IMG/VR virus record: IMGVR_UViG_3300036715_000626
Location: 124,001-188,000 of that record
Length of the DNA stretch: 64,000 bases
Direction: 5' to 3' (one strand)
Part shown: positions 1 through 64,000 of the stretch, piece by piece
How the letters are laid out: every line of letters starts with the position of its first letter
Position numbering within the stretch: position 1 is the first letter of the stretch
Made by a program: the position numbers and the translations under genes
Notes under the pieces: generated by a model
Told to the model about the DNA's origin: nothing
Database searches by the model: none
Seen by the model: only the letters and a program-made list of their open reading frames with translations

Positions 1-1035
1 AGAAGTTGGGCAAGTGAATTTGGTAAACCTAATTTACAATACTGGCATGTACTTGAAAAACTTATTCTAGAGATGAAAGAAAAAGATATAACTTATGAAA
101 TAGTTAAAGTCTTAGGCCATTCAACATCGTTAGGAAATATTCTAGCAGACCGTTTAGCATTATTAGGACGTACTGAATCAACGCGTTTAAACGCAGATAT
201 CTCTATAATGGTTACTCCTGCTAAGAACTACTGGACTGCTAAAGTTGATAGACATCCGTTCCTAAGTTTTAAACAATTGTTCTTTACTAACACATTACGA
301 GAATCTAACACTGAAAACTTGTATGCTGTGATGAACTACAAACGTGATGTAGAACCTGGTAAGAAATCACACGAAGCTTGTTTTGGACTAGTACTCTTAC
401 AAGAACAACAAACCTACATTGAAAGTGTTATTGACGTATATCAAAAGCATCTTAAGACATTATCGATAATTTATACAGCAAATCTAAATGATATTTATTC
501 ACAATATGCTATCTTGTATAATAGTTTGTTTGGAGATAAAATATATAATTATAACCGTAAGAGAGGAATTCTGAGTGTATTGGAAAGACTTGAATTAGTA
601 TATGACGTAAGACCTACTGGATTAGCTAACCAAGCTATCGACAAGATAATGGGGCTCTACACAATTATTCGTGAATATCGATCAACTGATAAGGTTCATG
701 CTAATCGTCTCTTTATAGACGTCACAGATAGCTTCTACGGTGTAGATGAGAAAGGTAAACCAGTTACTGTTATTAAAAACGGTATTAACTCTGTTAACCT
801 TGAAGTAAACGCTTTCGATACAGATTTGTTTATTCCGATTGAATTAGGAAAAGATACTTTAGAACGTAATGTATTTAAACGTATTGAAAAAGAAAATACT
901 AAAGTTACTTTAGTGGTCACTAAGATATCTCCGACATTTATCGATTACTATCTTGTAGTTGAAATGGTTAACACTGGAGATATTTCAGTATGGTGTAATT
1001 TCTATAATAATAACATACTTTTACCAAAAAAATAA
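1..1035 (+). CDS. Hypothetical phage protein, 5'-truncated by the window edge
   Basis: Frame 1 is open from base 1 (RSWASEFGKPNLQYWHVLEKLILE) straight into the listed ATG at 73; no family recognised. Confidence 0.75.
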   Translation, partial: RSWASEFGKPNLQYWHVLEKLILEMKEKDITYEIVKVLGHSTSLGNILADRLALLGRTESTRLNADISIMVTPAKNYWTAKVDRHPFLSFKQLFFTNTLRESNTENLYAVMNYKRDVEPGKKSHEACFGLVLLQEQQTYIESVIDVYQKHLKTLSIIYTANLNDIYSQYAILYNSLFGDKIYNYNRKRGILSVLERLELVYDVRPTGLANQAIDKIMGLYTIIREYRSTDKVHANRLFIDVTDSFYGVDEKGKPVTVIKNGINSVNLEVNAFDTDLFIPIELGKDTLERNVFKRIEKENTKVTLVVTKISPTFIDYYLVVEMVNTGDISVWCNFYNNNILLPKK

Positions 1036-1039
1036 CCGA

Positions 1040-1073
1040 TAACTACTACCTAGGTAATCCTAGGTAGTAGTTA
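1040..1073. terminator. Palindromic hairpin (15-bp stem, 4-nt loop)
   Basis: TAACTACTACCTAGG-TAAT-CCTAGGTAGTAGTTA between convergent genes. Confidence 0.75.
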
Positions 1074-1214
1074 CTTAATGAAACTGTGTATGCTGTGTAT
1101 AAAACTAGCAGCATAGTATGTACCTGTCGCTAAAGTCGCGACTCCTAATACTGTGGCTAGAATTTCTTCTAGAACAGTATTCCAATTCCCGGTAACGATA
1201 TTTTTAACATTCAT
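1071..1214 (-). CDS. 47-aa small hydrophobic protein (not in ORF track)
   Basis: Manual translation MNVKNIVTGNWNTVLEEILATVLGVATLATGTYYAASFIHSIHSFIK; AGGAG SD 7 nt upstream; TATATTAT motif at 1248-1255. Confidence 0.65.
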   Translation of the reverse strand: MNVKNIVTGNWNTVLEEILATVLGVATLATGTYYAASFIHSIHSFIK

Positions 1215-1247
1215 AATAGACTCCTCGGTCTGGTATTAATTAACTAT

Positions 1248-1255
1248 ATAATATA
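1248..1255 (-). promoter_or_regulatory. Putative early (vRNAP) promoter TATATTAT
   Basis: About 34 nt upstream of ATG 1214; recurring motif resembling the phiKZ early consensus TATATTAC. Confidence 0.55.
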
Positions 1256-1311
1256 GCTTTATATTTTAATGGAAATGATGTTACACTATGGACGCATATG
1301 CATCCATAGTG

Positions 1312-2190
1312 TTATTTATCGGCTAACTTCTCTACGAGAGTAATAGAATGTTTAAACGTATCTAAACACTGATTGTATACATAGATCATTGTGATAGCAC
1401 TTGTGATTGCTTTAGCGGAGTTCTCTAGCATACCACCAAGATGTTCTAACACGTTACGAGAAATATTCATATCTTTATTATCATTAAGATACTTGTAAAG
1501 AGTGTTAACTCGTTCTGAAATAACTTTGGAAAGAGTTTTAATCTCTTCCATGCGTTTAAGCGTCGCGGTACCGTTTAGTTTAATAATAGTGTCATAACAC
1601 GTATCATAACTATTGATAGACGGAATAACGTTACCTAAGTTAGCTCTATCCTTAACACCGTTCTCATCGATGATTTCTGCGATAAGACCATATAATTTTG
1701 AAGAGATTTCAAAATCGTTTTTATCGCGGAATGGTTTAGTTTGTGTACGGAAATCTTTATTAGTAAGAACTTTTGAAACAGTATCGTCAGTTTCTTTAAG
1801 TATAGCGATAAGTTCCTTATCGATAATATCAAATCCACGCGATACACGATCAAGACTGTCCGGTAATGAAAGTTTCATACCTAACAAGACAGGTACTTGT
1901 ATTTTTTCAACATCAACAAGTTTAACGTTTTGTTTAATCTTATCAATACTCTGACGCATATCAAAGAGTTCTTTACCGCTGCGAGTAAGTTGTTGATCGT
2001 TCATACCCATAAGACGATTGATGGAGTTTACAAATGTTTCAGAGATAGCTTTGAGTTGTGATGTAAAGAACGAAGCAATCTGTGAAATGAATACTCCAAA
2101 TTCCTCGTTACTAGGGTTATATTTAGCCCGTTCGTACATATTAGGAATACCTAAAAGTGCTTGAGTGTTAACTAATTTTAAATTTTCCAT
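1312..2190 (-). CDS. Probable virion head protein (phiKZ gp153-like position)
   Basis: Helical 292-aa protein divergent from uvsX as in phiKZ; S-N-E motif (PSNEEF) resembles a prohead-protease site. Synteny from memory. Confidence 0.45.
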   Translation of the reverse strand: MENLKLVNTQALLGIPNMYERAKYNPSNEEFGVFISQIASFFTSQLKAISETFVNSINRLMGMNDQQLTRSGKELFDMRQSIDKIKQNVKLVDVEKIQVPVLLGMKLSLPDSLDRVSRGFDIIDKELIAILKETDDTVSKVLTNKDFRTQTKPFRDKNDFEISSKLYGLIAEIIDENGVKDRANLGNVIPSINSYDTCYDTIIKLNGTATLKRMEEIKTLSKVISERVNTLYKYLNDNKDMNISRNVLEHLGGMLENSAKAITSAITMIYVYNQCLDTFKHSITLVEKLADK

Positions 2191-2277
2191 AGAAGTAACC
2201 TTTTTTGGTGTAATATCAATTAAAAAAGAAATTTAATGCCGTATATTTAAATAGGATATAAACGTTAAGGATAAAAT

Positions 2278-3717
2278 ATGTTAGATTTTGGAATATCGAA
2301 TAAAACTATGCCTAAATACCTTCTTAATATAGGAGCTGGTTTAGACATACCAACTGGTGATATTATAATTGGGAATAAAGGCGAAACTATTATTAACGGT
2401 GGTCATAGTCAACTAGTAGCGATAGCTGGTAACGGAAATAACTATAAGAGTAGTATTCTACACTATATGAATCTTTCAGCGGTATCAAGAGTGATGGAAG
2501 CACATGAAACACGCATGACCTCATACGATACTGAAGTTAACGTTTCGCTTACACGTCTGGAACATCTAGCTAAAAACTTTGAAAATCTTCCAGAAAATAT
2601 TATTACAGAAAGTCCTATTTGGAGTGTTACCGATAAAGCGATGATGGATGCTGAAGATTGGGCTAACATGTTTTTCAAATACGCAGAAGACAAACAGAAA
2701 GATAAAGCTAGTATGATACTTTGCGAGCCGTTCTTAGATCCTTATACTAAAGGACCTTTACATATGTTATTACCTACATTCGCCGAAATCGATTCACTAA
2801 GTGAATTTGAATCTTCAGCTACCGGTGATGTCATTACTAAAGATATTGATAGTTCAGATACCAATACGGCTGCTATGAAACAAGGTTTGTTTAAAATGAA
2901 GTTTATGGCTCAGTTACCACGACTTGCTAATGCTGCTAATATATATCTTTCATTCACAGCCCAGAGTGGTGAAAAAGTAAATATTGCTACAGGGCCTGCT
3001 GTTTATAATCAACCAGCTAAGAAACTTCAGTATATGAAACAAACTGATAACCTTAAAGGCGTTAGTAGTAAGTTCTATTTCTTAATTACTAACTTATGGT
3101 TTGCACATCCAGCGACACCTCTTAAGAATCAAACTACAAAACAACCAGAGTATCCACTTGGTAGTGATGTTGAGTCTACAGAGAACGAACTTAACATCGT
3201 TAAGATGACGACGGTTAGAAATAAGACAGGTCAGAGTGGTACAACACTTGAACTTGTTGTTTCACAAACTAACGGTGTACAACCATCATTAACAGAGTTC
3301 CACAATATCAAAGAGAATGGCCGTTACGGTATTTCTGGTTCTAACTTAAGTTATGCTTTGGATTTATTACCAGAAGTCAATCTATCACGAACAACAGTTC
3401 GTAAAAAGATCGATAGCAACCATATTTTAAGACGAGCTATTAATATTACATTAGAACTTATGCAAGCACATATTTATCTTTGGAAACTTGGTGATAGTGG
3501 TTTACTCTGCACTCCTAAAGAACTCTATGACGATATTAAAAAATTAGGATATGATTGGAATATCCTTTTGAATACTCGTGGGTACTGGACGTTCAACCAG
3601 TATACTAACAAGAAACCATTCTTAAGTACTATTGATTTGCTTAAGATGCGTAAAGAAAAATACTTCCCATACTTCTTAAACGAAGATAAAACATTAAAAG
3701 ATTATTATAAGGAATGA
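2278..3717 (+). CDS. uvsX: UvsX/RecA-like recombinase (phiKZ gp152-like)
   Basis: Divergent Walker A AGNGNNYKS, Walker B FAEIDSLS; lies three genes from the gp149-like vRNAP subunit. Confidence 0.8.
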   Translation: MLDFGISNKTMPKYLLNIGAGLDIPTGDIIIGNKGETIINGGHSQLVAIAGNGNNYKSSILHYMNLSAVSRVMEAHETRMTSYDTEVNVSLTRLEHLAKNFENLPENIITESPIWSVTDKAMMDAEDWANMFFKYAEDKQKDKASMILCEPFLDPYTKGPLHMLLPTFAEIDSLSEFESSATGDVITKDIDSSDTNTAAMKQGLFKMKFMAQLPRLANAANIYLSFTAQSGEKVNIATGPAVYNQPAKKLQYMKQTDNLKGVSSKFYFLITNLWFAHPATPLKNQTTKQPEYPLGSDVESTENELNIVKMTTVRNKTGQSGTTLELVVSQTNGVQPSLTEFHNIKENGRYGISGSNLSYALDLLPEVNLSRTTVRKKIDSNHILRRAINITLELMQAHIYLWKLGDSGLLCTPKELYDDIKKLGYDWNILLNTRGYWTFNQYTNKKPFLSTIDLLKMRKEKYFPYFLNEDKTLKDYYKE

Positions 3718-3992: not shown

Positions 3993-3993
3993 A

Positions 3994-5231: not shown

Positions 5232-5270
5232 TAACGTTGGTTGTACCAACGTTACAGGGAGATTTTGACT

Positions 5271-5939
5271 ATGAAAAATAGAAAAAAAGCAGAAGAGTTT
5301 ATCTTATCATATATCGATAAAATAGATCTTGGTGAAAAACGTAATACTAAACTTTACAAAGATTTGTTTAAAGGTATGTCTGATAATGAATTTGAAAACT
5401 TCATGTCCGGATTGCGTAATAAGACAATCACTTTAAGTATGATAGTACCTAACGGTGGTGATGTTAAAATCACTGTGGAAAATAATTTTAAGATAGCTAA
5501 AGAATTAGGACATGAGTTCTTTCAGAATATTCGCATTACTGGCCAAGTAGATTTACCTGATTTCATAACCCCTATTAAACATCTTACCTACATTCTTCCT
5601 ATTAGAAGAGCAGCGCAGTTACTCAGTAAGAAGATATCTATACCAGAGTCTGATAAATCAATTGATATGTTAACAGGTCAAGTTACTAATAAGTCTAAGT
5701 CTAGCAAGATAACTATGCCCGAGATACAAATGTTGATTGGTATGGGACTTAAAGATAGTGTGCGTGAGTTACTTAAAATTCGCGGCGGTGATATTCAAGC
5801 CAATAACGCTATGAATATGATGTTGTATAAACAAGGCTCGGCCTCACAAGCAGCTATTGAACCATACAGTTCAGGTGTGGAAAGTACGAAAACATTAAAG
5901 GCTTATCTTAACGCAAGCCATATTAAATCAACATTATAA
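5271..5939 (+). CDS. Virion RNA polymerase beta-subunit C-terminal fragment (phiKZ gp149-like)
   Basis: Motifs LPIRRAAQLLSKKISIP, IDMLTGQV, KITMPE and ELLKIRGGD; the likely start is ATG 5271 behind GGGAG rather than TTG 5241. Confidence 0.8.
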   Translation: MKNRKKAEEFILSYIDKIDLGEKRNTKLYKDLFKGMSDNEFENFMSGLRNKTITLSMIVPNGGDVKITVENNFKIAKELGHEFFQNIRITGQVDLPDFITPIKHLTYILPIRRAAQLLSKKISIPESDKSIDMLTGQVTNKSKSSKITMPEIQMLIGMGLKDSVRELLKIRGGDIQANNAMNMMLYKQGSASQAAIEPYSSGVESTKTLKAYLNASHIKSTL

Positions 5940-8246: not shown

Positions 8247-10397
8247 TTATAACACAATTGTATTTAAATCGCGAAGTACCTCGATAGTAAATACCGGTAA
8301 CATCTCTTCTACTTTTAAATCGGTAGATTGGTTAATTATTTCCATGTATCCAGAAACAGTATTTTCCATAGATGACATGAATGGTAGGTTGTTAGTATAA
8401 TAATTAGCTAGACTAAAGTCATAATTATTAGCTTCTAAATTTATCTTAGTATACTCAGGTTCTAAAGGATCTATTATAGAGGCTCCTGTAGTGGTTACAA
8501 GCCCTTTAGTGTTCTTAATGACAGATATACTTGTATATGGTACAAAAGTTGTTTTAGAGTTCTCTACGGCGTTCACAGCATGTACAGTATATGATGTTAA
8601 CTTCGTTATAATGTCAATATAGTTTTGGTTATTAGTTTCTATAGTATCATATGCATCAATGTTGATACCTGTCACAATTATAAACAAATCTTTAATAGCT
8701 AAAGAGATATCAAAATATTCAGTATCTTTTAATACGATACCATGTTTAGAAAGCACCGCATCTATAGTGGTAGGAGCCCCATTATTCTCAAAATTAATAA
8801 CATGTGTTTCAAATACTCTTGAAGCTGCTATCTTAATATTACTAGAGTTAAGAGCGTTCTCAGAATTTACATCAGTTATCCATACAAACTTATATAAGTT
8901 AGTGATATCATCAATGTGTGTTTTGAAAGTATCTTTATTATATAGCATACTATTATGTCTAACAGGAACCATATCGATAATATCAAAAGCTCTGTCTAGT
9001 ACATCATGTCCGTTAAACAGATTCGATACTAAATCAGGACCCGATAAAACAGTAGGATCTTTTAATATCTTACACGAAATATTAGTCAACATGCTAGATT
9101 CATTATTAGTAAGTTTTAGTAAAAACTTTAATAATAAATAGTATGCTTCTAATGGAGTAATGTTATAGCTAACTTTAGTATTAGGTTCAAGGTAGGTAAC
9201 CTTTTCCGTAAAACTGTTGTTATGTGCTAGGTATATCCAATTATCCATAATAGTTAAAATAATATCATCGCCGTAGAGTTTAAATAACTGCGGTATGTTA
9301 ATATCAATAACTTTAGTTTTTTGTTTAAACAACAAAGATTTATTAAGAGTATTATCAGCATAACGCGCTATGTTACTCAACTCATCAGGTGTTACTGGAA
9401 CATCTATGTTGTGAGCAGCCATCTCTAAATTAACAATAGTATAAATATCTAACTCACTATTAATATCAAATTGATAGGAGTTGTTTTTACCTTGACCGAT
9501 AAACAATGCACCGGTATCACTATACAATGAACTACTAGTATCTAGTATATCAGAATTGAGGCTAGGATCCTTCTTAAAAAGGATATGTTCTCCAACACCA
9601 ATTCCGTTAGCATCAAATACATTTAACAATAATGATTTAAACGCTTCTGTGCTACCGGTATGTTTCATTAAGTAGCGTAAGTTTTTATATAACCAAAACT
9701 TAGTAGATTCTTTAAAGCTAGCAATATTATCCCATAGATCCAAGTGACTTCTAAAGAAGTGTTCCATATGGAATGGGTGTACTTCTGCAGTGTTGATCTT
9801 ATGTAGACGAAGGTTAGCTATCTTATTAGGTATTGCCGCAAACAACACAGCCAATAAACTAGCTGCGTATAGTTCATCTGTTAAAACATAGTCTATGATA
9901 TCCCAACGTTTTAAATAGTTCTTAATATAAAGTTCTAGTTCTCTAATTAACGAGAACTCGTTCTTAAATACTAAATCACTATTATAGTTTAGAATTTTAC
10001 CTTCAGCAGCGTTAATCGCTACAGTCATATCTACCGGTAACATACATCCATTTATATAACTAAAGTCGTTAGGGTATAAACTAATAAGTTCTTTATAGTA
10101 ATTACCATATTTAAGAAGTTCTTTTCTGGTGTATGGATACTGGTCTAGAATCGTTTTAGTTAATAATACTTTAGTAGTATTTTCAATCAGGGTTATGTAT
10201 ATTTCACTACTATTAGTATGATGTTTTTGACCTGAGATATTAAGATAATATTTCCAAGTAGTTTTATCAGAAGAAATAGTTAAATCGTAGAGTCTTTCTA
10301 GACCAAAATTAATAGCTACTGCTGTGGTACTGTTTTTTATAACCAAGCTATTAGTGAGTAAGTGTATGTCATTCTTATATTGATCTACAGTATACAT
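8247..10397 (-). CDS. Virion structural protein (phiKZ gp128-like)
   Basis: 716 aa; TWKYYLNISG and FWLYKNLRYLMKHTG motifs; adjacent to the portal as in phiKZ-like phages. Confidence 0.65.
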   Translation of the reverse strand: MYTVDQYKNDIHLLTNSLVIKNSTTAVAINFGLERLYDLTISSDKTTWKYYLNISGQKHHTNSSEIYITLIENTTKVLLTKTILDQYPYTRKELLKYGNYYKELISLYPNDFSYINGCMLPVDMTVAINAAEGKILNYNSDLVFKNEFSLIRELELYIKNYLKRWDIIDYVLTDELYAASLLAVLFAAIPNKIANLRLHKINTAEVHPFHMEHFFRSHLDLWDNIASFKESTKFWLYKNLRYLMKHTGSTEAFKSLLLNVFDANGIGVGEHILFKKDPSLNSDILDTSSSLYSDTGALFIGQGKNNSYQFDINSELDIYTIVNLEMAAHNIDVPVTPDELSNIARYADNTLNKSLLFKQKTKVIDINIPQLFKLYGDDIILTIMDNWIYLAHNNSFTEKVTYLEPNTKVSYNITPLEAYYLLLKFLLKLTNNESSMLTNISCKILKDPTVLSGPDLVSNLFNGHDVLDRAFDIIDMVPVRHNSMLYNKDTFKTHIDDITNLYKFVWITDVNSENALNSSNIKIAASRVFETHVINFENNGAPTTIDAVLSKHGIVLKDTEYFDISLAIKDLFIIVTGINIDAYDTIETNNQNYIDIITKLTSYTVHAVNAVENSKTTFVPYTSISVIKNTKGLVTTTGASIIDPLEPEYTKINLEANNYDFSLANYYTNNLPFMSSMENTVSGYMEIINQSTDLKVEEMLPVFTIEVLRDLNTIVL

Positions 10398-15137: not shown

Positions 15138-15408
15138 TATTATCTCCTTGAGTGTATTTATATTCTATCGTAATAGGTTCTGTGGCGTCACAACATGTTT
15201 CTTCTTCGATACCAGATATAAAGATTATGGATGGAGTAGGACCTTTCTCGCAGCTAATAATATTTACCCAATCTCGCAGGCATTTACTAACAGAGCTATG
15301 ATCTGTTTCGTAAAAAGTGATGTTTAGACGAAATAGTTTACGCTTACGCCGTTTATTACCTTTGATACGGTAGTAACGTTTTTTATCTTTAATCAAGATC
15401 CGGGACAT
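15121..15408 (-). CDS. Hypothetical basic protein
   Basis: 95-aa ORF overlapping both neighbours; K/R-rich N-terminus. Confidence 0.55.
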   Translation of the reverse strand: MSRILIKDKKRYYRIKGNKRRKRKLFRLNITFYETDHSSVSKCLRDWVNIISCEKGPTPSIIFISGIEEETCCDATEPITIEYKYTQGDNNDSTS

Positions 15409-45108: not shown

Positions 45109-45139
45109 GACTACATACCGCATCTGCGGTATGTAGTCT
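45108..45139. terminator. Palindrome (15-bp arms, 2-nt spacer)
   Basis: AGACTACATACCGCA-TC-TGCGGTATGTAGTCT between convergent genes. Confidence 0.75.
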
Positions 45140-47170: not shown

Positions 47171-47199
47171 GTAAGTAGGAAGCAATGCTTCCTACTTAC
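47171..47199. terminator. Palindrome (14-bp arms, 1-nt spacer) overlapping the topA stop
   Basis: GTAAGTAGGAAGCA-A-TGCTTCCTACTTAC. Confidence 0.7.
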
Positions 47200-53437: not shown

Positions 53438-54436
53438 TTATGTGCTATAAAATAGATCTTCTATTTGTGGTCCTGAAGTACCGGCTTCGCCTGTAAAACT
53501 ACCATCATCACTTACTAATAGCACCATTAATCCGTTACCAGATCTACAGGTAACTTTATCGTTATCAATGCTAATAACATCTTTACCAGAAATACTAATA
53601 GTCGTATAATCTTTAAGACTAATATACTCCCTACCGTTCTTATCAAAACGATCCTTAGGGAAACTGTACGGATTAAACTCTACTGGTTCGTTATCCGTGT
53701 TTCTTATTTCCTTAACAATATACATAATGTCTTTAGTAAGTATATCAAGATTAAGTATTGTAAGTAGATACTCTAGACTATCATTAGGATGAGCCAAGTG
53801 TTCTTTGACTAAGGCTTGTAAATGATCGAAGCTAAATACAATTGACTTCTTATAGATATTTTTCAAATCATTATGAAATTTGGGATCTACATTATAGTCA
53901 GCGCAGTATTCAGTAATAATGCTTTCTTCAATACGACTATAGTCAATTCGATAGAGTGCCCTGCCGGGTCTACTACGAATAAAACTAGAGATAGTATGTT
54001 TGTTATTCTCTGTTATAAAAAACAGTTTCTTAGTACGGTTAATACCGGATAACATGGTTAACATTTTCTCTTGAAGTTGCATATTGAAATTCTTACTGAA
54101 CTCGTCAAACAGTATGACTGCGTCAGTTACACCATTGATATATTTAACCGTATCAATATCAGCATTTATATCCGTTACAACGATAACCGGTAGCCCACAA
54201 TCTATAGCGATATTGGCAGTTACTTGCGCTTGCTCAGTTTTACCAGATCCTGAATTACCTGTAAGTATTACTCCGATAGATTTTTCAGATACAGCAAAGG
54301 TATTCCAAAAACGAAGAGCTAATTGTTCTACATTACCATACAGTTTCTTAGGTAAAGTGAATCTTTCGATATCAGGTTCGATGTAATGAACATTATCTTG
54401 TTTTCTTAAATAATATACTCCAGCTGGGTATTGCAT
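53438..54436 (-). CDS. AAA+ ATPase
   Basis: GNSGSGKT Walker A, ILFDEFSK Walker B, FITEN and RPGR arginine finger. Confidence 0.88.
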   Translation of the reverse strand: MQYPAGVYYLRKQDNVHYIEPDIERFTLPKKLYGNVEQLALRFWNTFAVSEKSIGVILTGNSGSGKTEQAQVTANIAIDCGLPVIVVTDINADIDTVKYINGVTDAVILFDEFSKNFNMQLQEKMLTMLSGINRTKKLFFITENNKHTISSFIRSRPGRALYRIDYSRIEESIITEYCADYNVDPKFHNDLKNIYKKSIVFSFDHLQALVKEHLAHPNDSLEYLLTILNLDILTKDIMYIVKEIRNTDNEPVEFNPYSFPKDRFDKNGREYISLKDYTTISISGKDVISIDNDKVTCRSGNGLMVLLVSDDGSFTGEAGTSGPQIEDLFYST

Positions 54437-57579: not shown

Positions 57580-60039
57580 TTACTCCCATTCTACATATCT
57601 AAACATACTACAATCATTAATTATATTGTTACAGGATAAACTTAACCCTGTTTGTATCGTAGGTATTTCCACAATTATCCCACATCTTATGTCAGGCGTA
57701 TTTATAACATACTCTGTGTGTATGCTAGATAGTTTAGTGTTAGCTACACCTGATGCTGTTATACCAGCAAATGAAGTACCGGTAGTTATGTTGTTTATAG
57801 AGGTAACTGTACTAACATTTATATTCATAGCTGGATATTGTGTAACTGTGTTTATGTTATTTACTTTAGTATTAGAATATCCATGTGCATTTACGGCATT
57901 AAACACCGTACTGGTTGTTATAGGTACTACGGTAGCAATTGTGTTACTTCTACAAGTAACATTATTAAATACCGTTCCTGTTATTATAGGCGCTAACGCG
58001 ATTAAATTGTTACCAGTAACAACTTCTAGAGGGAATAATGTTGTCGTAGATATCGGTATTATCTCGGCAGTAGCTTTGCCTATTACACTCGTAGAATTAA
58101 ACGAAGTAGTGGTGTCTATAACACTAACCAAACTTCTGCTTGATCCATTAGCTGTCAAACTAGGAAATGTAGTACTAGTATTAATAGATGCGATATTAAT
58201 ATTTTGGTCTAGTTTAATCTTTATTTCATTATAAGTGGTATTAGTTTCTATAGTTAAAATAGCTATATTGTTACTACCATTAGCATTTACTGTTACTAAA
58301 TTTGTAGAGGTATCAATTGATGTGGCGTGACCTGTAGCACCGGCTCTTCCTGTTACATCTAGACTATTAGTGGATACTATAGTTCCAATCTGCGTAACTG
58401 CGCTACCGTAAACATTAACATCTGTAAAAGAAGTATTAGTAACTAGGCTGGTTAACGTGACATCAGCGCTGTTTCTAACATATAAGTTACTAAATACCGT
58501 CTCGGTGTTTATGCTGTTTACAATAGCTTTAGCGTCACCTGTAGTATGCACTGTATCTATATAACCAAAACTATCGATACTGGTAATAGAAGTTATCGAG
58601 CTACCGTGTGCTAAAATAATACCATTTATAATTGTATGTGTTTCTATTCCAGAAACACTAGTATACGCTAAACCAGTAATAGCTATATTATTTATAACAG
58701 TGGTAGTTGTTATCATAGGCGTTGTAGATACACTACTACCGCTGCTGGTATTATTATTTATTATCGTGCTAGAAGGAATTGATAATAGATTTGTTTTACT
58801 ATCACCAGTAACATTGTTATTATTAAAATTACTATTTGAATTTATAGCGGACACAACAGTGGTACTGTCACCGGTGCAATTTATATTATTAAATATAGTA
58901 TTGGTTACTATAGTAGGTACAAGTGTATTTATAGGAATTCTTGCGATGATTCCGGTGACGGTAGTTGTCGTCTCTATACCGCTTATGCTAGTAACACTAT
59001 CACCTTTTATAACACCTGAATTTATATCTGTATATGTTTGTAAGGCAGATACCGGTGTTACTGAATACCCCATAGACTGTATTGATGTGAAATTAGTACT
59101 TGTCGTTATATTATCAATAGTAGTGTGTGAGTTACCGATTACGCTCATACTATTAAAAATAGTGTTAGCAATTATTTGGTCAATCGGAATAACTGCATTA
59201 TTACGGATAGATATACTAGGGAACGTAGTACTTGTATTAATAACAGTGGTATTAGTTATGCAGTTACCCTGAACACTTAATGTGTTAAATGTTGTATTGG
59301 TAACTATAGTATTAATGGTGCTATTAGAAGAACCTTTAACAGTGGGAGTACCTATAGTGGTGCTCGTAATGTTAGCTATAACACTAGTTATTGCATCGCC
59401 ACTAACAAGTATTTCGTTAAATACTGTATTCACACTTATATAACTTAACGCAGTATTAGATATCCCGTTCGTAGTGGATACGTTAAATAGTGTACTAGAA
59501 GGTATTGTTAACAAATTAGTCTTGGATTCCCCAATTACTGTTATGTTATTAACTGTACTTGTTGTCAAAATAGGCGAAATTACCGCACTCGCACTAGCTT
59601 GAACTGTTATTGGTGTAAAATCCGTAACTGTATTTATCACCGGTACCACAACAGTCTCAGGTAAAGATATTGTTATAGGATTGAATGTAGTAGTAGTGCT
59701 AATACCATTAATACTAGTAGAAGCGCTACCGTAAACATTAATCGTGTTAACATTAGTACTGCTATTTATAGTGTTAGAAACAGTATGCGCATTTCCATTA
59801 ATACTTATGCTTTGAAAATCACTAGTTGTTGATAACTCTGTAAATCCTGCTGTGGCGTTACCATTTACAGATATGTTATTAATAGATGTATTTGTACCTA
59901 TAACACCACTAGCTGCGTTAGCATCTCCCGTAACAATTATATCGTTAAAAGAAGTTGTCGTGGCTACTACCGCCATGTTGACGGTAGTGCTTACACTAGT
60001 TGCACCGGCAGTATATAGGGGGTATAATGTAAGTAACAT
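57580..60039 (-). CDS. Fibre-like protein built of ~36 tandem 22-aa T/S/N/I-rich repeats
   Basis: Manual parsing gives consensus I-x-T-x-T-x-F-N-x-I-x-V-x-G-x-S/A-x5-6 over nearly the whole length. Confidence 0.8.
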   Translation of the reverse strand: MLLTLYPLYTAGATSVSTTVNMAVVATTTSFNDIIVTGDANAASGVIGTNTSINNISVNGNATAGFTELSTTSDFQSISINGNAHTVSNTINSSTNVNTINVYGSASTSINGISTTTTFNPITISLPETVVVPVINTVTDFTPITVQASASAVISPILTTSTVNNITVIGESKTNLLTIPSSTLFNVSTTNGISNTALSYISVNTVFNEILVSGDAITSVIANITSTTIGTPTVKGSSNSTINTIVTNTTFNTLSVQGNCITNTTVINTSTTFPSISIRNNAVIPIDQIIANTIFNSMSVIGNSHTTIDNITTSTNFTSIQSMGYSVTPVSALQTYTDINSGVIKGDSVTSISGIETTTTVTGIIARIPINTLVPTIVTNTIFNNINCTGDSTTVVSAINSNSNFNNNNVTGDSKTNLLSIPSSTIINNNTSSGSSVSTTPMITTTTVINNIAITGLAYTSVSGIETHTIINGIILAHGSSITSITSIDSFGYIDTVHTTGDAKAIVNSINTETVFSNLYVRNSADVTLTSLVTNTSFTDVNVYGSAVTQIGTIVSTNSLDVTGRAGATGHATSIDTSTNLVTVNANGSNNIAILTIETNTTYNEIKIKLDQNINIASINTSTTFPSLTANGSSRSLVSVIDTTTSFNSTSVIGKATAEIIPISTTTLFPLEVVTGNNLIALAPIITGTVFNNVTCRSNTIATVVPITTSTVFNAVNAHGYSNTKVNNINTVTQYPAMNINVSTVTSINNITTGTSFAGITASGVANTKLSSIHTEYVINTPDIRCGIIVEIPTIQTGLSLSCNNIINDCSMFRYVEWE

Positions 60040-60042
60040 ACT

Positions 60043-62886
60043 TTAGAACCAGAGCATAGTACGGTATAACTCGGCTCCGCTATTACGCATGTGATAAAGG
60101 TAATTTATACCAGAATCACTTTTTACAATTTCCATACGGTTACCAATAGCCGGAGCTAACTGTGTATTAGGTACAGCACCCGCTCCAAATATTCTACCAA
60201 GTGTTATATCATAATAGTATACATACTGCACAACTCCAGAAGCAACAGCTGGTGAAAAATATATACGGTTAACTCCGTCATATGCATAATAAGTACCAGC
60301 CCCCATAGTATCTGTTTGAGGAGTAAAGAATAACGAATACTCAAATAGTTCCGTTGTAATGTCATAACGATCAGCTGTATTAGATCCTCCGCCGCGCGGT
60401 AAAAACATATATTTACCATTAGATACTCCACCAAACATCCATAGTAATTCAATACCCACACCTCTATTAGGTACACTTAGTATAGTATAGGTCGTAGTTG
60501 CATCAGGAGCAAAACCTGTAATCGCTGTGAATGTCAATGTATTCGAAGTGTTCGAAACAATTGTTATTTCATTAAGCGCCGCTGCTAAACCGAACCCACT
60601 ACCACCAGTGATACGGACTTTCTTACCTGCCCATTGATTAACAACCCAGTTTTGGGTGGTATCTACTAGTGTAGATGCAGAACCAGCCCCAGTGCAAACA
60701 CCAAAACTATCCTGAATAATATATCTAGTAGTCGAATCTGGCGTAAACGACTGTGTTGCATACGTTAATGTATTGTTAGTATTACTAGTAATAGTTATAT
60801 AGGTATCTCTACCGGTACCTGCTAATATTCTAAACCGATAACCAGCCCACTGATTAGTGTTCCAATTTTTAGTAGTATCTACTAATGTGGTCGTAGAACC
60901 ACCTGTAGCTAACCCATATGAACTTTTTGTAAGATCCTTATATTGCTCATCTCTACCAAACATACTATTATTAACAATAACATATCGACCGGTACCGTTT
61001 ACAAGTGCGGTTGTGATAGTAGCTACCGTTAAGGTAGTCGCTGTGTTAGAAGTAATTATACGTGGTTGAACTGCTCCAGATGTACCTACTAAATGGGTCT
61101 GAACTATTTTACCAACATGTTCGTTAACGGTCCAGTTTTTAGTAGAATCTACTATAACGGTAGCTGATAATGCATTAGCCGCGGTCATGTTACCAGATGC
61201 TGCCGTAGCAAAATCGAAACCAGTTAATGAATCACACCCTATAATGGTAACAGTACCTGCGTACGAGGAATCTCCCGAAAGAACTACTGAATCGCCTATT
61301 TTAAAGTTATGGTTAATAGCGGTCACTACGTTACACACAACACCTACTACAGTTACGTTAGCTACAAATCCAGTTCCGACACCAGTTGTCGCAGATTGCG
61401 CGAAAGTAGTTACAGAATAACCACTACCTGGACGGTACAGCGATATACCAGTTACTACACCACCAGCACTAACTGAAGTTACTTGCACCTTACCACTAGT
61501 TCCGGTCACAAGAGTGATTATTTCACCGACGACATACCCAGTACCCGCTGCAGATATAGTTACTGTTTTAATACCAGATGTTGTTCTTGTACCTGAAGTT
61601 AGAGCTATTGTAGGGGTATCCAAACCAGGAAAGTTAGCGCCTAAAATACACGCCACCCCGTCATCATATTTACTACCTTCTATCACTAAGTCTGAATCTA
61701 CATCATATTGTAACATAGCCGCTTGAGCATTACCTGTAATATAAAATTTATCTTTATCTGCTATAATTTCATATACTGATGTATTATCAGGTGTAATAGT
61801 CCATTTTCTAGCAACTTCTACGTAATTTGTTCCGGTACTAATTATTCGTCTTTGTTGCCCCACACCAGTACCAGAAGTAATACGTACTCTATAATTATTA
61901 TATTGATTTACTGTATATGCTTTAGCCGTGTTGACTAATGTATAGACGGTACCGGAAGTAGCTGTTCCGGTATCATATATTCCCCCAATCTCACTAGTAC
62001 GTTCAAGTGTTCCGTCCGTACCAAATGCAGCCAGTGTTATATTGGTAGGTACTGTTTTATATTGCCATGTATCCATAGCAGTATCATAATACTGTAATGA
62101 AAAAAACGGAGCTGCTACAGAAGATGTTAACAACCAACAACCACCCGACTCTACTTTATAGGTAGATGTGTAATCTGGTTGTACAGTCCATGGTGTATCG
62201 ACAGTTACGTCTGAAGCTTCAATAACAAAGTGGGATTGTGAACCGGCTGTTGTAGACGGAGTAGTAACAAAACTGACATTATTAAACGGATATAGCGGTT
62301 GGTAGTTAGCATCTGCAACATACAATGTTGTATTATCATTATACAAAATCTTACGTATTTGTGTCATACCAGTACTAAAGGTAATTCGTACTTGATAACC
62401 GCACCATTGATTCATTTTCCATTTTTTAGTAGAATCACCGATACTTGTAGCTGATGCAACAGTAGCTACTCCTTGATCATACTTTGTAGGAATCCCTGTC
62501 GTAGTTATTGTTCTAGTTTGTCCGCTACCAGTACCAGAAGTAATACGTATTTTAAATCCATCTAAAATATTTGCATTAAATCCAGCTATTCGTATTTGAT
62601 TAGCGGCAGGAGTACTGATAACACGCCCGTATGTTCCACTGAACGCAGAATATCTTAAAGATGCAAATACTGTAGGGGAAAGCAAAAGAGGAGCAAGTTT
62701 ATGCGGGACATTACCATAGGTATCGTATTTATAAAATGACGCTCCGGACACATAATAAATTCCCCTTCCCTTCCCGTCTTCTTGTGTAGTTAATGCGGAC
62801 AACGCACTTGAAGCTACTGGTAGCGGTTCCATAGATTGCCAAAGTTGTTTATTGTCGATTGTGTGGTTATTATTCGTAGTGGCCAT
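60043..62886 (-). CDS. Large tail-associated repeat protein
   Basis: About six copies of a D.TKNW..NQW.G..VRI..GTG.G..R.I.SN...TL module between propeller-like terminal segments. Confidence 0.7.
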   Translation of the reverse strand: MATTNNNHTIDNKQLWQSMEPLPVASSALSALTTQEDGKGRGIYYVSGASFYKYDTYGNVPHKLAPLLLSPTVFASLRYSAFSGTYGRVISTPAANQIRIAGFNANILDGFKIRITSGTGSGQTRTITTTGIPTKYDQGVATVASATSIGDSTKKWKMNQWCGYQVRITFSTGMTQIRKILYNDNTTLYVADANYQPLYPFNNVSFVTTPSTTAGSQSHFVIEASDVTVDTPWTVQPDYTSTYKVESGGCWLLTSSVAAPFFSLQYYDTAMDTWQYKTVPTNITLAAFGTDGTLERTSEIGGIYDTGTATSGTVYTLVNTAKAYTVNQYNNYRVRITSGTGVGQQRRIISTGTNYVEVARKWTITPDNTSVYEIIADKDKFYITGNAQAAMLQYDVDSDLVIEGSKYDDGVACILGANFPGLDTPTIALTSGTRTTSGIKTVTISAAGTGYVVGEIITLVTGTSGKVQVTSVSAGGVVTGISLYRPGSGYSVTTFAQSATTGVGTGFVANVTVVGVVCNVVTAINHNFKIGDSVVLSGDSSYAGTVTIIGCDSLTGFDFATAASGNMTAANALSATVIVDSTKNWTVNEHVGKIVQTHLVGTSGAVQPRIITSNTATTLTVATITTALVNGTGRYVIVNNSMFGRDEQYKDLTKSSYGLATGGSTTTLVDTTKNWNTNQWAGYRFRILAGTGRDTYITITSNTNNTLTYATQSFTPDSTTRYIIQDSFGVCTGAGSASTLVDTTQNWVVNQWAGKKVRITGGSGFGLAAALNEITIVSNTSNTLTFTAITGFAPDATTTYTILSVPNRGVGIELLWMFGGVSNGKYMFLPRGGGSNTADRYDITTELFEYSLFFTPQTDTMGAGTYYAYDGVNRIYFSPAVASGVVQYVYYYDITLGRIFGAGAVPNTQLAPAIGNRMEIVKSDSGINYLYHMRNSGAELYRTMLWF

Positions 62887-62895
62887 ATTGATCCT

Positions 62896-63345
62896 TTATA
62901 CGTATTGTATGTTATTTAATATTCCAGTATTAAAAGCTGTATCCATCTGAGCTTCTACCACACGTTGCGCTTGTACATCCCCTATTCGAGCTTGATTGGA
63001 TAAAGTACCTACAGTTGTAGTAGTAGCAACTGTTGTTACTGTTGTTACGGTCCCAACTGTTCCTAGTCCTCCGGATTTAGCTAAATTTACATATAACTGT
63101 TTAGCTGGATCGGTAATCATGCCAAATTCTAATCGATCTAGAAAATATGCCATAATGTTGTATATGTCAGTCATAGTTTTATCGTTGGTAGGCATCGGGT
63201 TATCAGTAGAAACTAATCCACCATCTACAGAACTTCCACCTAATTGCAATTTAACTATTTGTGTTTCAGTATTGTCAGTTAGCTTATCCGTGTTAACACT
63301 ATGTAGTGTACTATTAGTGTCGCTAAGCACTACTTCAGTTTGCAT
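62896..63345 (-). CDS. Tail-associated protein with TVT repeats
   Basis: GTVGTVTTVTTVATTTTVGT segment; AAGGAG SD. Confidence 0.6.
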   Translation of the reverse strand: MQTEVVLSDTNSTLHSVNTDKLTDNTETQIVKLQLGGSSVDGGLVSTDNPMPTNDKTMTDIYNIMAYFLDRLEFGMITDPAKQLYVNLAKSGGLGTVGTVTTVTTVATTTTVGTLSNQARIGDVQAQRVVEAQMDTAFNTGILNNIQYV

Positions 63346-63378
63346 GTTGTCTCCTTGTATGTGATAAAAAAATACTAC

Positions 63379-63405
63379 GTTCTAGAGGATATAATCCTCT
63401 AGAAC
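63379..63405. terminator. Hairpin (12-bp stem, 3-nt loop)
   Basis: GTTCTAGAGGAT-ATA-ATCCTCTAGAAC. Confidence 0.7.
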
Positions 63406-63428
63406 TATTGTACCGAATATGTGTTAAA

Positions 63429-63836
63429 TTAATTCCATACAAAAATACCAGCGGCATTGTTGATATCAGCCACGAACGCGCCATCTGTAGATGTACGATC
63501 GCTTCCGAAGTCAATGACGCAAACACATTTGTTACCGTTGGTAGCGTTGTAGATCATCGCGCCACGTGCTGTGATACTAGCTGCCGGCCAAGTGATGTCA
63601 TCACAAGTAAACCCTACAGCTGGGGCAGCTGTAGCTAAGGCGACATTGACTAACGATTGTCCGCCTGCAGTATATCCTGTTCCGGATACTTCACCTGTTG
63701 TTGTGTACACTGTAGTAGTAGAACTTAAAGTCGCTGCTGATGTGTATAGTGCAATTTTATAGGTATCCGCTAAATGATGTTCCCCGTTAAAAACCTGTTG
63801 TTTGTACGATGTGGCTAGGCCAGCACTGATTGCCAT
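63429..63836 (-). CDS. Conserved aquatic-phage structural protein (MAIT..TSFK-type family)
   Basis: MAISAGLATSYKQQ...YKIALYTSAATL..TTT.YTTTGEVSGTGYTAGG...CVIDFGSDRTST pattern. Confidence 0.65.
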   Translation of the reverse strand: MAISAGLATSYKQQVFNGEHHLADTYKIALYTSAATLSSTTTVYTTTGEVSGTGYTAGGQSLVNVALATAAPAVGFTCDDITWPAASITARGAMIYNATNGNKCVCVIDFGSDRTSTDGAFVADINNAAGIFVWN

Positions 63837-63895
63837 GGTAATCCTTTTCTGTTATGAGGTATGTATTTTTAGTACTAATCATTAAATAAACAATC

Positions 63896-64000
63896 TTACA
63901 CACCAAAGGTATAAGTAGTATTTATAATGTTCGCACCATCTAATAGGATTGTTTTAATAAGTGGTTTAGGATAACCAGTTTTACCTGTTAGTGTTATTAC
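63896..64000 (-). CDS. 3' end of a gene entering from beyond the window
   Basis: Open frame VITLTGKTGYPKPLIKTILLDGANIINTTYTFGV*. Confidence 0.55.
   Translation of the reverse strand, partial: VITLTGKTGYPKPLIKTILLDGANIINTTYTFGV

What the first reader, a model, noticed from the sequence alone, without database searches (positions are those of the whole stretch)
1..64000. phiKZ-like jumbo phage with a possible Campylobacterota host
Seen: split vRNAP and nvRNAP subunits, a phiKZ-type capsid, portal, DnaB and UvsX in phiKZ-like order. Established: this gene set marks Chimalliviridae/phiKZ-like phages, many of which build a protein nucleus. Inference: the ThyX N-terminus (S..LEF.PV type), the Cys-rich small-domain protein and the MKNLIIVESPAK TopA start resemble my recollection of Sulfurimonas/Arcobacter-type homologs. 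I know of no characterised phiKZ-like phage of that phylum.
Basis: partly seen in the sequence, partly recalled or inferred. Interest (0 to 1): 0.65.

Follow-up and report, generated by a model that had tools for sequence, protein, structure and literature searches.

The report
Nucleus-type jumbo phage, likely Arcobacteraceae host
The window is about a third of a complete 205-kb uncultivated phiKZ-like (chimallin-encoding) jumbo phage, and several of its bacteria-derived genes point to Arcobacteraceae (Campylobacterota), a phylum for which I found no such phage described.

Summary
The window is bases 124001-188000 of a 205,015-bp IMG/VR virus record with a 127-bp end overlap. It carries a phiKZ-type capsid gene (Pfam PhiKZ_MCP, E 1.6e-148), a gp129-like portal, DnaB, a UvsX-like recombinase, one virion-RNAP piece (gp149-like) and one non-virion-RNAP piece (gp123-like).

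- chimallin (Pfam PF25677 above its cut-off, plus matches to solved chimallins);
- PhuZ;
- a PicA (gp69) homolog;
- all nine split RNAP subunits.

In total 61 proteins have phiKZ homologs. Membership of the Chimalliviridae-type group is well supported. The lineage is deep: the capsid is at most 37% and chimallin at most 26% identical to any isolate.

The host inference is supported but not proven. TopA is 52-59% identical over its full length to Arcobacteraceae TopA. It is 44-50% identical (N-terminal 608 residues only) to other Campylobacterota and at most 46% to other phyla sampled. Phage TopAs form one clade beside Arcobacteraceae. The Cys-rich protein also points to Campylobacterota. No CRISPR spacer was found in 151 sampled Arcobacteraceae genomes.

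Verdict: a new member of a known kind, of moderate interest.

The parts
1..1035 (+). 3' part of a gp155-like (RNase H-type ribonuclease) gene; the whole gene is contig 123569-125035
   Evidence: blastp to phiKZ gp155 E 1e-16; phmmer 5e-13
1312..2190 (-). gp153-like protein (weak)
   Evidence: phrog_4682 E 3.5e-14; phmmer to phiKZ gp153 E 7e-4
2278..3717 (+). UvsX/RecA-like recombinase (phiKZ gp152 homolog)
   Evidence: 37% identity, E 1e-85; phrog_97
5241..5939 (+). virion RNA polymerase beta-type fragment (phiKZ gp149 homolog)
   Evidence: 40% identity, E 2.5e-46; phrog_3233 E 4.9e-72
8247..10397 (-). head structural protein (phiKZ gp128 homolog)
   Evidence: E 2e-35; phrog_3222 E 1.6e-85
10421..13063 (+). 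portal-type virion protein (phiKZ gp129 homolog)
   Evidence: E 7.7e-82; phrog_3004 E 9.6e-166. That gp129 is the portal is from established knowledge of phiKZ, not tested here.
15389..17140 (-). non-virion RNA polymerase subunit (phiKZ gp123 homolog)
   Evidence: E 4e-28; phrog_2943 E 1.4e-83
18502..20658 (-). major capsid protein, phiKZ type
   Evidence: PF25620 E 1.6e-148. Best isolate is AgentSmith at 37%. Tree.
21399..22910 (+). DnaB-like replicative helicase (phiKZ gp118 homolog)
   Evidence: 31% identity, E 5.7e-79; phrog_3213
24352..24873 (+). peptidase M15 cell-wall hydrolase
   Evidence: PF08291 E 1.8e-9
25354..25926 (-). GH108 lysozyme with peptidoglycan-binding domain (endolysin)
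   Evidence: PF05838 E 3.5e-16, PF09374 E 2.5e-7
27759..31523 (-). large tail-fibre-like protein
   Evidence: weak K1-lyase N-terminal match; it sits next to the fibre gene
31537..35400 (-). tail fibre protein. Its N-terminal repeats resemble a 756-aa protein in an Arcobacteraceae-family genome.
   Evidence: PF22337, PF12195, fibre PHROGs; 52% over 131 aa to G355
35817..36389 (-). dCMP deaminase
   Evidence: PF00383 E 1.1e-18
39361..40620 (-). divergent ThyX-fold protein with a zinc-ribbon insert. The RHR motif reads THT.
   Evidence: AF2 pLDDT 89. Foldseek and VIA-align top 47 PDB entries are all ThyX/FDTS or the ThyX-like methylase PolB, Z 8-12.6, next Z 3.1. No Pfam Thy1 hit.
41608..43920 (+). 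ribonucleotide reductase, class II-like
   Evidence: phrog_367 E 2e-88; weak RNR-II insertion domain
44614..45108 (+). Cys-rich small-domain protein; its cellular relatives are in Campylobacterota
   Evidence: Atlas clusters score 0.92-0.95 and TM 0.72-0.74, all with Campylobacterota commonest. 40% to a Sulfurimonas sp. protein. 41-45% to Arcobacteraceae-family genes.
45138..45767 (-). secreted DNA/RNA non-specific endonuclease
   Evidence: PF01223 E 4.9e-32; the signal-peptide-like N-terminus is read from the sequence
47192..49549 (-). type IA DNA topoisomerase (TopA), Arcobacteraceae-like
   Evidence: Pfam
49969..51186 (-). DHH phosphoesterase
   Evidence: phrog_4771 E 2.3e-52
52178..52948 (-). 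thymidylate kinase
   Evidence: PF02223 E 2.7e-26
53438..54436 (-). AAA-type ATPase
   Evidence: phrog_2376 E 7e-60
57580..62886 (-). two large proteins (819 and 947 aa) without any family match; function unknown (virion component is only a guess)
   Evidence: no Pfam or PHROG hit

Best explanation
The window is part of a complete, circularly assembled genome of about 204.9 kb. It belongs to an uncultivated lytic jumbo phage of the chimallin-encoding (Chimalliviridae-type, phiKZ-like) group.

By homology it should replicate as its studied relatives do (inferred, not shown):
- a virion-packed four-piece RNA polymerase starts early transcription;
- a chimallin shell encloses the phage DNA;
- a PicA-type importer and a PhuZ tubulin serve that compartment;
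- a five-piece non-virion polymerase transcribes later genes.

The phage belongs to a metagenomic clade, nearest to Bacillus phage AgentSmith among the isolates compared. An ancestor of that clade captured a bacterial TopA gene from an Arcobacteraceae-like bacterium. The most likely host is therefore a member of Arcobacteraceae (Campylobacterota) living in microbial mats or sediment.

Split of confidence: chimallivirus-type membership about 0.95; Campylobacterota host about 0.7; Arcobacteraceae specifically about 0.55.
For: Genome:
- One 205,015-bp contig whose first 127 nt equal its last 127 nt; IMG/VR classes it as having direct terminal repeats.

Family markers:
- PhiKZ_MCP E 1.6e-148.
- Chimallin at contig 69924-71786: PF25677 at 38.6 bits against a cut-off of 27. 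tblastn to FLC9 gives 9e-21, and it matches the annotated nuclear shell proteins of Goslar and RP12. It matches solved chimallins 7sqq and 8igg at E 1e-6. It sits in the phiKZ position between the gp52 and gp55 homologs.
- PhuZ at contig 108841-109935: matches solved PhuZ at E 1e-11 to 7e-21.
- Homologs of gp69 (PicA), of vRNAP gp178, gp180, gp149 and gp80, and of nvRNAP gp55, gp68, gp71-73, gp74 and gp123.
- 61 proteins with phiKZ homologs.
- In the capsid tree, window + two metagenomic phages has support 99/96; adding AgentSmith gives 97/95; all lie among chimalliviruses.

Host:
- The best 120 word-search TopA hits are all 54% identical or more. Every organism-named hit among them is Campylobacterota, Arcobacteraceae or Halarcobacter.
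- The 61-83% hits that were checked lie on phiKZ-like phage contigs.
- In the tree, a 21-row phage clade (support 98) sits inside a 75-row clade (support 100). That clade also holds the named Arcobacteraceae and Campylobacterota rows and is separate from 37 outgroup rows from more than ten other phyla and candidate phyla.
- In 301 Campylobacterota species genomes the scores are bimodal. Fifteen genomes give 52-57% over the full length; the rest give 44-50% over residues 1-608 only.
- Fourteen of those 15 appear in the listed part of the family-of-G269 sample. The 12 that were fetched have TopA 73-99% identical to other hits of the search, and six of them are 81-88% identical to named Halarcobacter or Arcobacteraceae proteins.
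- The phage TopA gene aligns at 64-67% nucleotide identity in 149 of 151 genomes of that family. The best protein match is 59%, in a bacterial context.
- Cys-rich protein.
- Other genes with homologs in Arcobacteraceae-family genomes are a CDF transporter (56% aa), a dimeric dUTPase (33-34% aa), a 172-aa protein (54% aa) and the tail-fibre N-terminus. These were not compared with other phyla.
- The DNA is held by microbial-mat and sediment metagenomes.
Against: - No CRISPR spacer match. The whole phage genome bar about 1 kb was searched against 151 sampled genomes of the family. Every short near-exact hit that was checked lay inside an ORF, with no repeats nearby.
- The TopA capture is old: phage TopAs differ by 17-39% among themselves, so a later host switch is possible.
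- The nearest isolate by capsid infects Bacillus, so hosts do change across phyla in this part of the tree.
- The 'Arcobacter sp.' label on a related phage's proteins comes from a phage contig binned into a MAG. It may not be independent evidence.
- GC is 34.8% against 27-31% in the sampled bacterial loci. This is uninformative, because phiKZ itself differs widely from its host.
- Nucleus formation is inferred from homology only. Chimallin is at most 26% identical to any studied one.
Confidence: 0.68

Rival explanations
1. It is the same chimallin-type jumbo phage, but the present host lies outside Campylobacterota, for instance another mat bacterium. On this reading the Campylobacterota-like genes are relics of an old transfer or of an earlier host.
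For: - The TopA capture predates the diversification of a 21-cluster phage clade.
- The cellular homologs are only 33-59% identical.
- The sister isolate infects Bacillus.
- No spacer was found.
Against: - Two genes that were compared across taxa (TopA and the Cys-rich protein) point to the same phylum.
- Several further genes have homologs in Arcobacteraceae-family genomes.
- A related phage of the clade is repeatedly binned with Arcobacter sp. MAGs.
- No rival phylum gave any signal in the searches made.
Confidence: 0.22
2. The host is in Campylobacterota but not in Arcobacteraceae, for example Sulfurimonadaceae or Sulfurovaceae, which are common in sulfidic mats.
For: - A named homolog of the Cys-rich protein is from a Sulfurimonas sp. 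MAG, in a chromosomal context.
- The habitat is mats and sediment.
Against: - TopA of the Sulfurimonas genome G001 is only 49% identical and aligns over residues 3-608 only. The Arcobacteraceae-type proteins are 52-59% identical over the full length.
- The Cys-rich protein is 41-45% identical to Arcobacteraceae-family genes against 40% to Sulfurimonas.
Confidence: 0.15
3. The phage is phiKZ-like in its virion and polymerases but does not build a protein nucleus. On this reading the weak chimallin homolog has another role, as in PBS1/AR9-type phages that lack chimallin.
For: Chimallin similarity is low: 24-26% identity and a Pfam score of 38.6 bits.
Against: - The match passes Pfam's curated cut-off and hits solved chimallins over about 380 residues.
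- The length is 620 aa against 626 aa in phiKZ, and the phiKZ synteny is kept.
- PicA and PhuZ homologs are present.
- The capsid lies inside the chimallivirus radiation.
Confidence: 0.05

Closest known systems
Pseudomonas phage phiKZ and other Chimalliviridae (Goslar, RAY, 201phi2-1, PhiPA3)
   Same: - Chimallin, PhuZ and PicA (gp69) homologs.
- Four vRNAP and five nvRNAP subunits.
- PhiKZ-type capsid, portal, sheath, terminase and inner-body proteins.
- Conserved local gene blocks.
- 61 proteins shared with phiKZ.
   Different: - Low identity: capsid 25% and chimallin not found by blastp against phiKZ.
- The gp71 and gp73 pieces are fused in one 727-aa ORF with no HNH gene between them.
- The blocks are rearranged.
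- The genome is smaller (205 kb against 280 kb).
- It carries TopA, a ThyX-fold protein (phiKZ gp235 is unrelated), a class II-like RNR, a dimeric dUTPase and a CDF transporter.
- The inferred host phylum differs.
Bacillus phage vB_BspM_AgentSmith and Burkholderia phage FLC9
   Same: - These are the nearest isolates. Capsid identity is 37% and 35%; chimallin identity is 25% and 24%.
- AgentSmith is sister to the window's clade in the capsid tree with support 97/95.
- AgentSmith has a similar genome size of about 200 kb.
   Different: - Hosts are Bacillus and Burkholderia.
- No DNA-level similarity: blastn of 7.6 kb of the window found nothing in the phage collection.
- Whether either carries TopA was not tested.
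Uncultivated relatives: JGI 3300077571 Ga0643589_000051 (103 kb), ENA ERZ23495856 RUSA22-1 scaffold_10 (187 kb), GenBank JBINOJ010001094.1 (165 kb, filed under an 'Arcobacter sp.' MAG)
   Same: - All carry a TopA of the same phage clade, 83%, 64% and 61% identical.
- The ENA and GenBank contigs carry PhiKZ_MCP and a divergent DnaB. All three carry an RNR, and the JGI and GenBank contigs also a Tmk and an AAA ATPase in a similar neighbourhood.
- The capsids of the ENA and GenBank contigs form a clade with the window's, support 99/96.
   Different: - They are different species or genera: capsid identity is 52% at best.
- The JGI relative has an intein in its RNR.
- The ENA relative carries DapD, thioredoxin and an NAD-dependent ligase near TopA.

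Membership tests
Chimalliviridae (as proposed by Prichard et al. 2023, PMC10299810) | Encodes a chimallin (ChmA) homolog | tested here: met
   PF25677 at 38.6 bits against a cut-off of 27; tblastn to FLC9 9e-21 and to the Goslar nuclear shell protein 8e-7; PDB chimallin 7sqq E 1e-6; phmmer to phiKZ gp54 1e-5
Chimalliviridae (as proposed by Prichard et al. 2023, PMC10299810) | Shares the conserved core genome (72 genes in seven blocks) | tested here: inconclusive
   61 proteins have phiKZ homologs, and syntenic blocks are visible. These were not mapped one by one onto the published list of 72.
Chimalliviridae (as proposed by Prichard et al. 2023, PMC10299810) | Two multisubunit RNA polymerases with split beta/beta' subunits (virion and non-virion) | tested here: met
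   Homologs of gp178, gp180, gp149, gp80 and of gp55, gp68, gp71-73, gp74, gp123, with E from 1e-18 to 1e-133
Chimalliviridae (as proposed by Prichard et al. 2023, PMC10299810) | Falls in the monophyletic clade of chimallin-encoding phages | tested here: inconclusive
   The capsid tree nests it among 12 chimallivirus isolates, but it is rooted at the midpoint without a chimallin-less outgroup. tblastn with the capsid found only phiKZ-like phages.
Chimalliviridae (as proposed by Prichard et al. 2023, PMC10299810) | Forms a protein nucleus during infection | not testable with these tools
   Needs a cultured host and microscopy
Phages of Arcobacteraceae / Campylobacterota (host assignment) | CRISPR spacers of the host match the phage | tested here: not met
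   Not found in the 151 sampled genomes of the family, for the whole genome bar about 1 kb. The candidate hits that were checked lay inside ORFs. Other families and metagenomes were not searched.
Phages of Arcobacteraceae / Campylobacterota (host assignment) | Host-derived genes are closest to that taxon | tested here: met
   TopA and the Cys-rich protein. For the CDF transporter and dUTPase, only presence of homologs in the family was tested, not that they are the closest.
Phages of Arcobacteraceae / Campylobacterota (host assignment) | Co-occurrence with the host in the same samples | tested here: inconclusive
   The runs are microbial-mat and sediment metagenomes. Laying their contigs on an Arcobacteraceae 16S gene gave only short pieces from conserved regions.
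Flavin-dependent thymidylate synthase ThyX (for window 39361-40620) | ThyX fold | tested here: met
   VIA-align Z 8-12.6 to 47 ThyX/FDTS (and ThyX-like PolB) entries, with the next match at Z 3.1; Foldseek probability 1.0
Flavin-dependent thymidylate synthase ThyX (for window 39361-40620) | ThyX motif RHRxxSxxxxSxR and a match to Pfam Thy1 | tested here: not met
   The motif reads THT..S....S.R, with T253 and H254 invariant in 48 relatives. There is no PF02511 match. It is therefore not filed as a ThyX enzyme.

The most novel reading that the evidence does not exclude
This phage and its metagenomic relatives are the first recognised lineage of nucleus-forming (chimallin) phages that infect Campylobacterota, specifically Arcobacteraceae. 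On this reading their ancestor took the host's own TopA so that DNA relaxation can go on inside a compartment that shuts out host enzymes. They also run an unusual nucleotide pathway around a ThyX-fold enzyme whose RHR motif has changed.
Probability: 0.5. Interest if true: 0.6.

Novelty: new member of a known kind. Interest (0 to 1): 0.5.

Why it matters
Studied nucleus-forming phages infect Gammaproteobacteria and Betaproteobacteria and one Bacillus. A 2025 survey of 1103 chimallin-encoding genomes lists predicted hosts in six orders, none of them in Campylobacterota (PMC12625630). My literature searches found no paper that links phiKZ-like or jumbo phages to Arcobacter or Campylobacterota hosts.

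A lineage on Arcobacteraceae would widen the known host range of this infection strategy to another phylum. It would give a candidate phage type for emerging food- and water-borne Arcobacter. It would also offer a natural case of a captured host topoisomerase in a phage that excludes host proteins from its DNA.

It remains an incremental extension of a well-known family. It is not a new kind of system.

Tried and rejected
- blastn of 7.6 kb of the window against 50,697 phage records found no match.
- The pattern-based genome-contig scan with TopA returned 43 loci from many phyla. The hits were chosen by peptide words, not by similarity, so they serve only as outgroups and not as a ranking.
- A second cluster look-up returned no organism names.
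- The Atlas search for the ThyX-like protein gave nothing usable.
- phiKZ gp235, a thymidylate synthase, is unrelated to the ThyX-like protein.
- Spacer hunt: short near-exact matches of 26-37 nt to Arcobacteraceae-family genomes were checked. All lay inside ORFs with no repeats nearby. The matches to window 8030-8098 fall in the Gly-rich repeat at the start of the 5980-8205 gene, and those to contig about 79.4 kb fall in an AT-rich spacer.
- Rfam found nothing in that AT-rich spacer.
- Laying mat and sediment contigs on an Arcobacteraceae 16S gene gave only fragments of conserved regions, so it gives no verdict on co-occurrence.
- GC content was rejected as host evidence, because chimalliviruses can differ widely from their hosts.
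- The 'Arcobacter sp.' names on proteins of a related phage were traced to a phage contig inside a MAG. I treat them as weak evidence that may not be independent.

Full report
**What the window is**

The window is bases 124001-188000 of a single 205,015-bp contig. The search tool calls it a virus record with direct terminal repeats. Its first 127 nt equal its last 127 nt, the usual sign of a circularly closed assembly, so the unique length is about 204.9 kb. GC is 34.8%. About 196 ORFs of 60 codons or more cover 94% of it. ARAGORN found no tRNA in the window. It found a 91-nt tRNA-Met and one odd tRNA-like call elsewhere on the contig.

**Checking the observation**

| Gene | Window coordinates | Evidence |
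|---|---|---|
| Major capsid protein | 18502-20658(-) | PF25620 PhiKZ_MCP, E 1.6e-148 |
| gp129-like portal-type protein | 10421-13063(+) | |
| DnaB-like helicase | 21399-22910(+) | |
| UvsX-like recombinase | 2278-3717(+) | |
| vRNAP fragment | 5241-5939(+) | 40% identical to phiKZ gp149 |
| nvRNAP subunit | 15389-17140(-) | gp123 homolog, E 4e-28 |

- **Gene order.** Order is phiKZ-like only within blocks. The window reads 155-153-152-149, then 128-129, then 123-120-118. Two of these blocks are inverted relative to phiKZ.
- **Rest of the window.** The region from 23 to 64 kb is not phiKZ core. It holds two cell-wall hydrolases, two very large fibre-like proteins, a nucleotide-metabolism cluster and TopA. 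The cluster comprises dCMP deaminase, a ThyX-fold protein, a class II-like RNR and thymidylate kinase. The region also holds a secreted nuclease, a DHH phosphoesterase, an AAA ATPase and two large proteins without any family match.

**Is it a chimallin-type phage?**

I fetched phiKZ and compared all its ORFs with all ORFs of the contig.

- **Polymerases.** blastp found homologs of every split polymerase subunit. The vRNAP pieces are gp178, gp180, gp149 and gp80. The nvRNAP pieces are gp55, gp68, gp71 and gp73 (fused here in one 727-aa ORF), gp74 and gp123.
- **Other core genes.** It also found terminase (41% identity), sheath, tube, prohead protease, both DNA polymerase pieces, PicA/gp69 and PhuZ/gp39. 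phmmer raised the total to 61 proteins with phiKZ homologs.
- **Inner body.** Three phiKZ-type internal head proteins were seen by Pfam.
- **Chimallin.** A 620-aa ORF at contig 69924-71786 lies between the gp52 and gp55 homologs, where phiKZ has gp54. Four results support it:
  - It passes Pfam's curated cut-off for PF25677 Chimallin_Phikzvirus (38.6 bits against 27).
  - It matches FLC9 (9e-21), AgentSmith, and the annotated nuclear shell proteins of Goslar and RP12.
  - It matches solved chimallin structures over about 380 residues at E 1e-6.
  - It matches phiKZ gp54 by phmmer at 1e-5.
- **PhuZ.** The candidate matches solved PhuZ structures at E 1e-11 to 7e-21.
- **Capsid search.** tblastn with the capsid found 242 phage records. 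All the listed hits are phiKZ-like jumbo phages, and none is more than 37% identical.
- **Capsid tree.** The tree uses LG+C20 with midpoint rooting. The window groups with two metagenomic phages (support 99/96), then with Bacillus phage AgentSmith (97/95), inside a clade with FLC9, RP12 and RSF1 (95/98).

Prichard et al. define the family by chimallin plus a shared core genome. They report 66 members on Gram-negative hosts and one Bacillus (PMC10299810). By those criteria this phage belongs, as a deep new lineage. That it actually builds a nucleus is inferred, not shown.

**Host evidence from TopA**

- **Word search.** The 120 best hits were all 54% identical or more. Every hit that carried an organism name was Campylobacterota, Arcobacteraceae or Halarcobacter.
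- **Phage copies.** The hits above 60% that I inspected lie on other phiKZ-like phage contigs. These are a JGI 103-kb contig, an ENA 187-kb contig and a GenBank 165-kb contig.
- **A caveat on names.** The GenBank contig is filed under an 'Arcobacter sp.' MAG. Such names are not safe evidence on their own.
- **A true bacterial context.** The Halarcobacter TopA sits in a bacterial context of MurB, futalosine-pathway and biotin synthase genes.
- **Tree.** A 112-row tree puts all phage TopAs in one clade of 21 rows (support 98). That clade lies inside a 75-row clade (support 100) with the Arcobacteraceae and Campylobacterota rows. It is well separated from 37 sequences of more than ten other phyla and candidate phyla. 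Those sequences are 32-46% identical to the phage TopA where the alignment is long.
- **Phylum sample.** Through a Sulfurimonas MAG I obtained a genome handle and searched 301 Campylobacterota species genomes. The result is bimodal. Fifteen genomes give 52-57% identity over the whole protein. All others give 44-50% over the first 608 residues only.
- **Naming the family.** Fourteen of the 15 appear in the listed part of the GTDB family-of-G269 sample. The 12 that were fetched have TopA 73-99% identical to other hits of the search, and six of them are 81-88% identical to the named Halarcobacter and Arcobacteraceae proteins. I therefore read that family as Arcobacteraceae.
- **DNA level.** The phage gene aligns with 149 of 151 genomes of that family at 64-67% identity. 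The best protein match is 59%, on a contig that is otherwise bacterial, with GC 27%.

**Other host-linked genes**

- **Cys-rich protein (44614-45108).** Its nearest Atlas clusters, by features and by structure, all have Campylobacterota as the commonest phylum. It is 52-95% identical to copies on related phage contigs. It is 38-48% identical to shorter proteins, one of which carries a cellular name, a Sulfurimonas sp. protein in a chromosomal context. It is 41-45% identical to genes of three Arcobacteraceae-family genomes.
- **Genes found by whole-genome DNA searches against that family**:
  - a CDF cation transporter, 56% aa identity;
  - a dimeric dUTPase (PF08761), 33-34% aa identity, with conserved stretches matching 42 of 151 genomes;
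  - a 172-aa protein, 54% aa identity;
  - the N-terminal repeats of the tail fibre, 52% over 131 aa.

  For these four I did not test whether other phyla are closer.
- **Habitat.** The phage DNA is held by two microbial-mat and two sediment metagenome runs from four studies.

**What speaks against the host call**

- **No spacer.** I searched the whole genome bar about 1 kb against 151 sampled genomes of the family. Every short near-exact hit that I checked lay inside an ORF with no repeats around it. A published survey found spacer matches for only 9% of such phages (PMC12625630), so this is weak negative evidence. Other families and the source metagenomes were not searched.
- **Old capture.** The TopA capture predates the split of a diverse phage clade.
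- **Host jumps.** The sister isolate infects a Gram-positive host, so a host change since the capture cannot be excluded.
- **Co-occurrence untested.** Laying the runs' contigs on an Arcobacteraceae 16S gene gave only short conserved fragments and decides nothing.

- **No family match.** The protein with the S..LEF.PV motif is at 39361-40620(-). Pfam and PHROGs give nothing, and PF02511 is not found anywhere in the genome.
- **ThyX fold.** An AlphaFold model built on 48 relatives has pLDDT 89. It matches only ThyX/FDTS-type structures: Foldseek gives probability 1.0, and VIA-align gives Z 8-12.6 for 47 entries, then 3.1.
- **Changed motif.** RHRxxSxxxxSxR reads THT..S....S.R, and the T and H are invariant across the relatives. 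A zinc-ribbon insert is present.
- **No host signal.** All 281 relatives are unnamed metagenomic proteins, several on contigs of 130-265 kb that include the related phage contigs of this clade. The protein carries no Sulfurimonas or Arcobacter signal and should not be called a thymidylate synthase without a test.

**Literature**

Full-text searches found no paper that joins Chimalliviridae, phiKZ or jumbo phages with an Arcobacter or Campylobacterota host. The only co-occurrences were in reference lists or unrelated host tallies.

**Verdict**

- **Observation.** Confirmed.
- **Family.** The family assignment is well supported.
- **Host.** The proposal is supported by two genes that were compared across taxa, plus several weaker leads. 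It sharpens to Arcobacteraceae but is unproven.
- **Standing.** This is a new, deep member of a known phage family, with a probable new host phylum. It is moderately interesting.

Noticed in passing
window 39361-40620 (-): ThyX-fold protein family (281 relatives, all unannotated) with the catalytic-site motif RHR changed to an invariant THT, plus a CPKC...CSKC zinc-ribbon insert. It sits with dCMP deaminase, RNR and Tmk, which may point to an unusual pyrimidine pathway or base modification.
   Followed up: partly
window 41608-45108: The Cys-rich small protein lies directly after the class II-like (B12-type) RNR. Its Sulfurimonas homolog lies in a cluster that looks like cobalamin uptake or remodelling (FecCD/ABC transporter, nitroreductase, APH-type kinase, aminotransferase). 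A B12-related role is possible.
   Followed up: partly
contig 5808-6755 (+), outside the window (L006:5808-6755): The phage carries a cation diffusion facilitator transporter (PF01545, E 1e-51). It is 56% identical to a chromosomal gene of an Arcobacteraceae-family genome. This is an unusual auxiliary gene for a jumbo phage.
   Followed up: partly
contig 76332-77156 (-), outside the window (L009:18233-19057): Dimeric all-alpha dUTPase (PF08761). Conserved stretches match 42 of 151 Arcobacteraceae-family genomes at 68-78% nucleotide identity; protein identity is 33-34%.
   Followed up: partly
contig 2832-5015 (-), outside the window: The nvRNAP pieces that are separate in phiKZ (gp71 and gp73, with gp72 between them) are one 727-aa ORF here.
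   Followed up: no
L060 / L061 (GenBank JBINOJ010001094.1 and JBINOI010001010.1): A 165-kb phiKZ-like phage contig (PhiKZ_MCP, divergent DnaB, TopA) is filed inside MAGs labelled Arcobacter sp., so its proteins carry a bacterial name. This is either phage contamination of a MAG or a co-binning hint at the host.
   Followed up: partly
L014:14881-18141: The closest relative (JGI contig, TopA 83% identical) has an intein with a LAGLIDADG domain inside its 1086-aa RNR. The window's RNR (770 aa) has none.
   Followed up: no
window 5980-8205 (-), N-terminus (about 8030-8100): A Gly-rich GGGGS-type repeat at the start of a 741-aa protein without family matches. It causes spurious DNA hits to repeats in several bacterial genomes.
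   Followed up: yes
L009:11125-11215 (-) and L009:15009-15081 (-): An unusually long (91 nt) tRNA-Met call, and a tRNA-like call with a two-base anticodon, lie either side of the chimallin gene.
   Followed up: no
window 31537-35400 (-), residues about 21-150: The N-terminal repeats of the tail fibre are 52% identical to part of a 756-aa protein in an Arcobacteraceae-family genome (G355:C5, about 446 kb). That protein may be a prophage fibre.
   Followed up: partly
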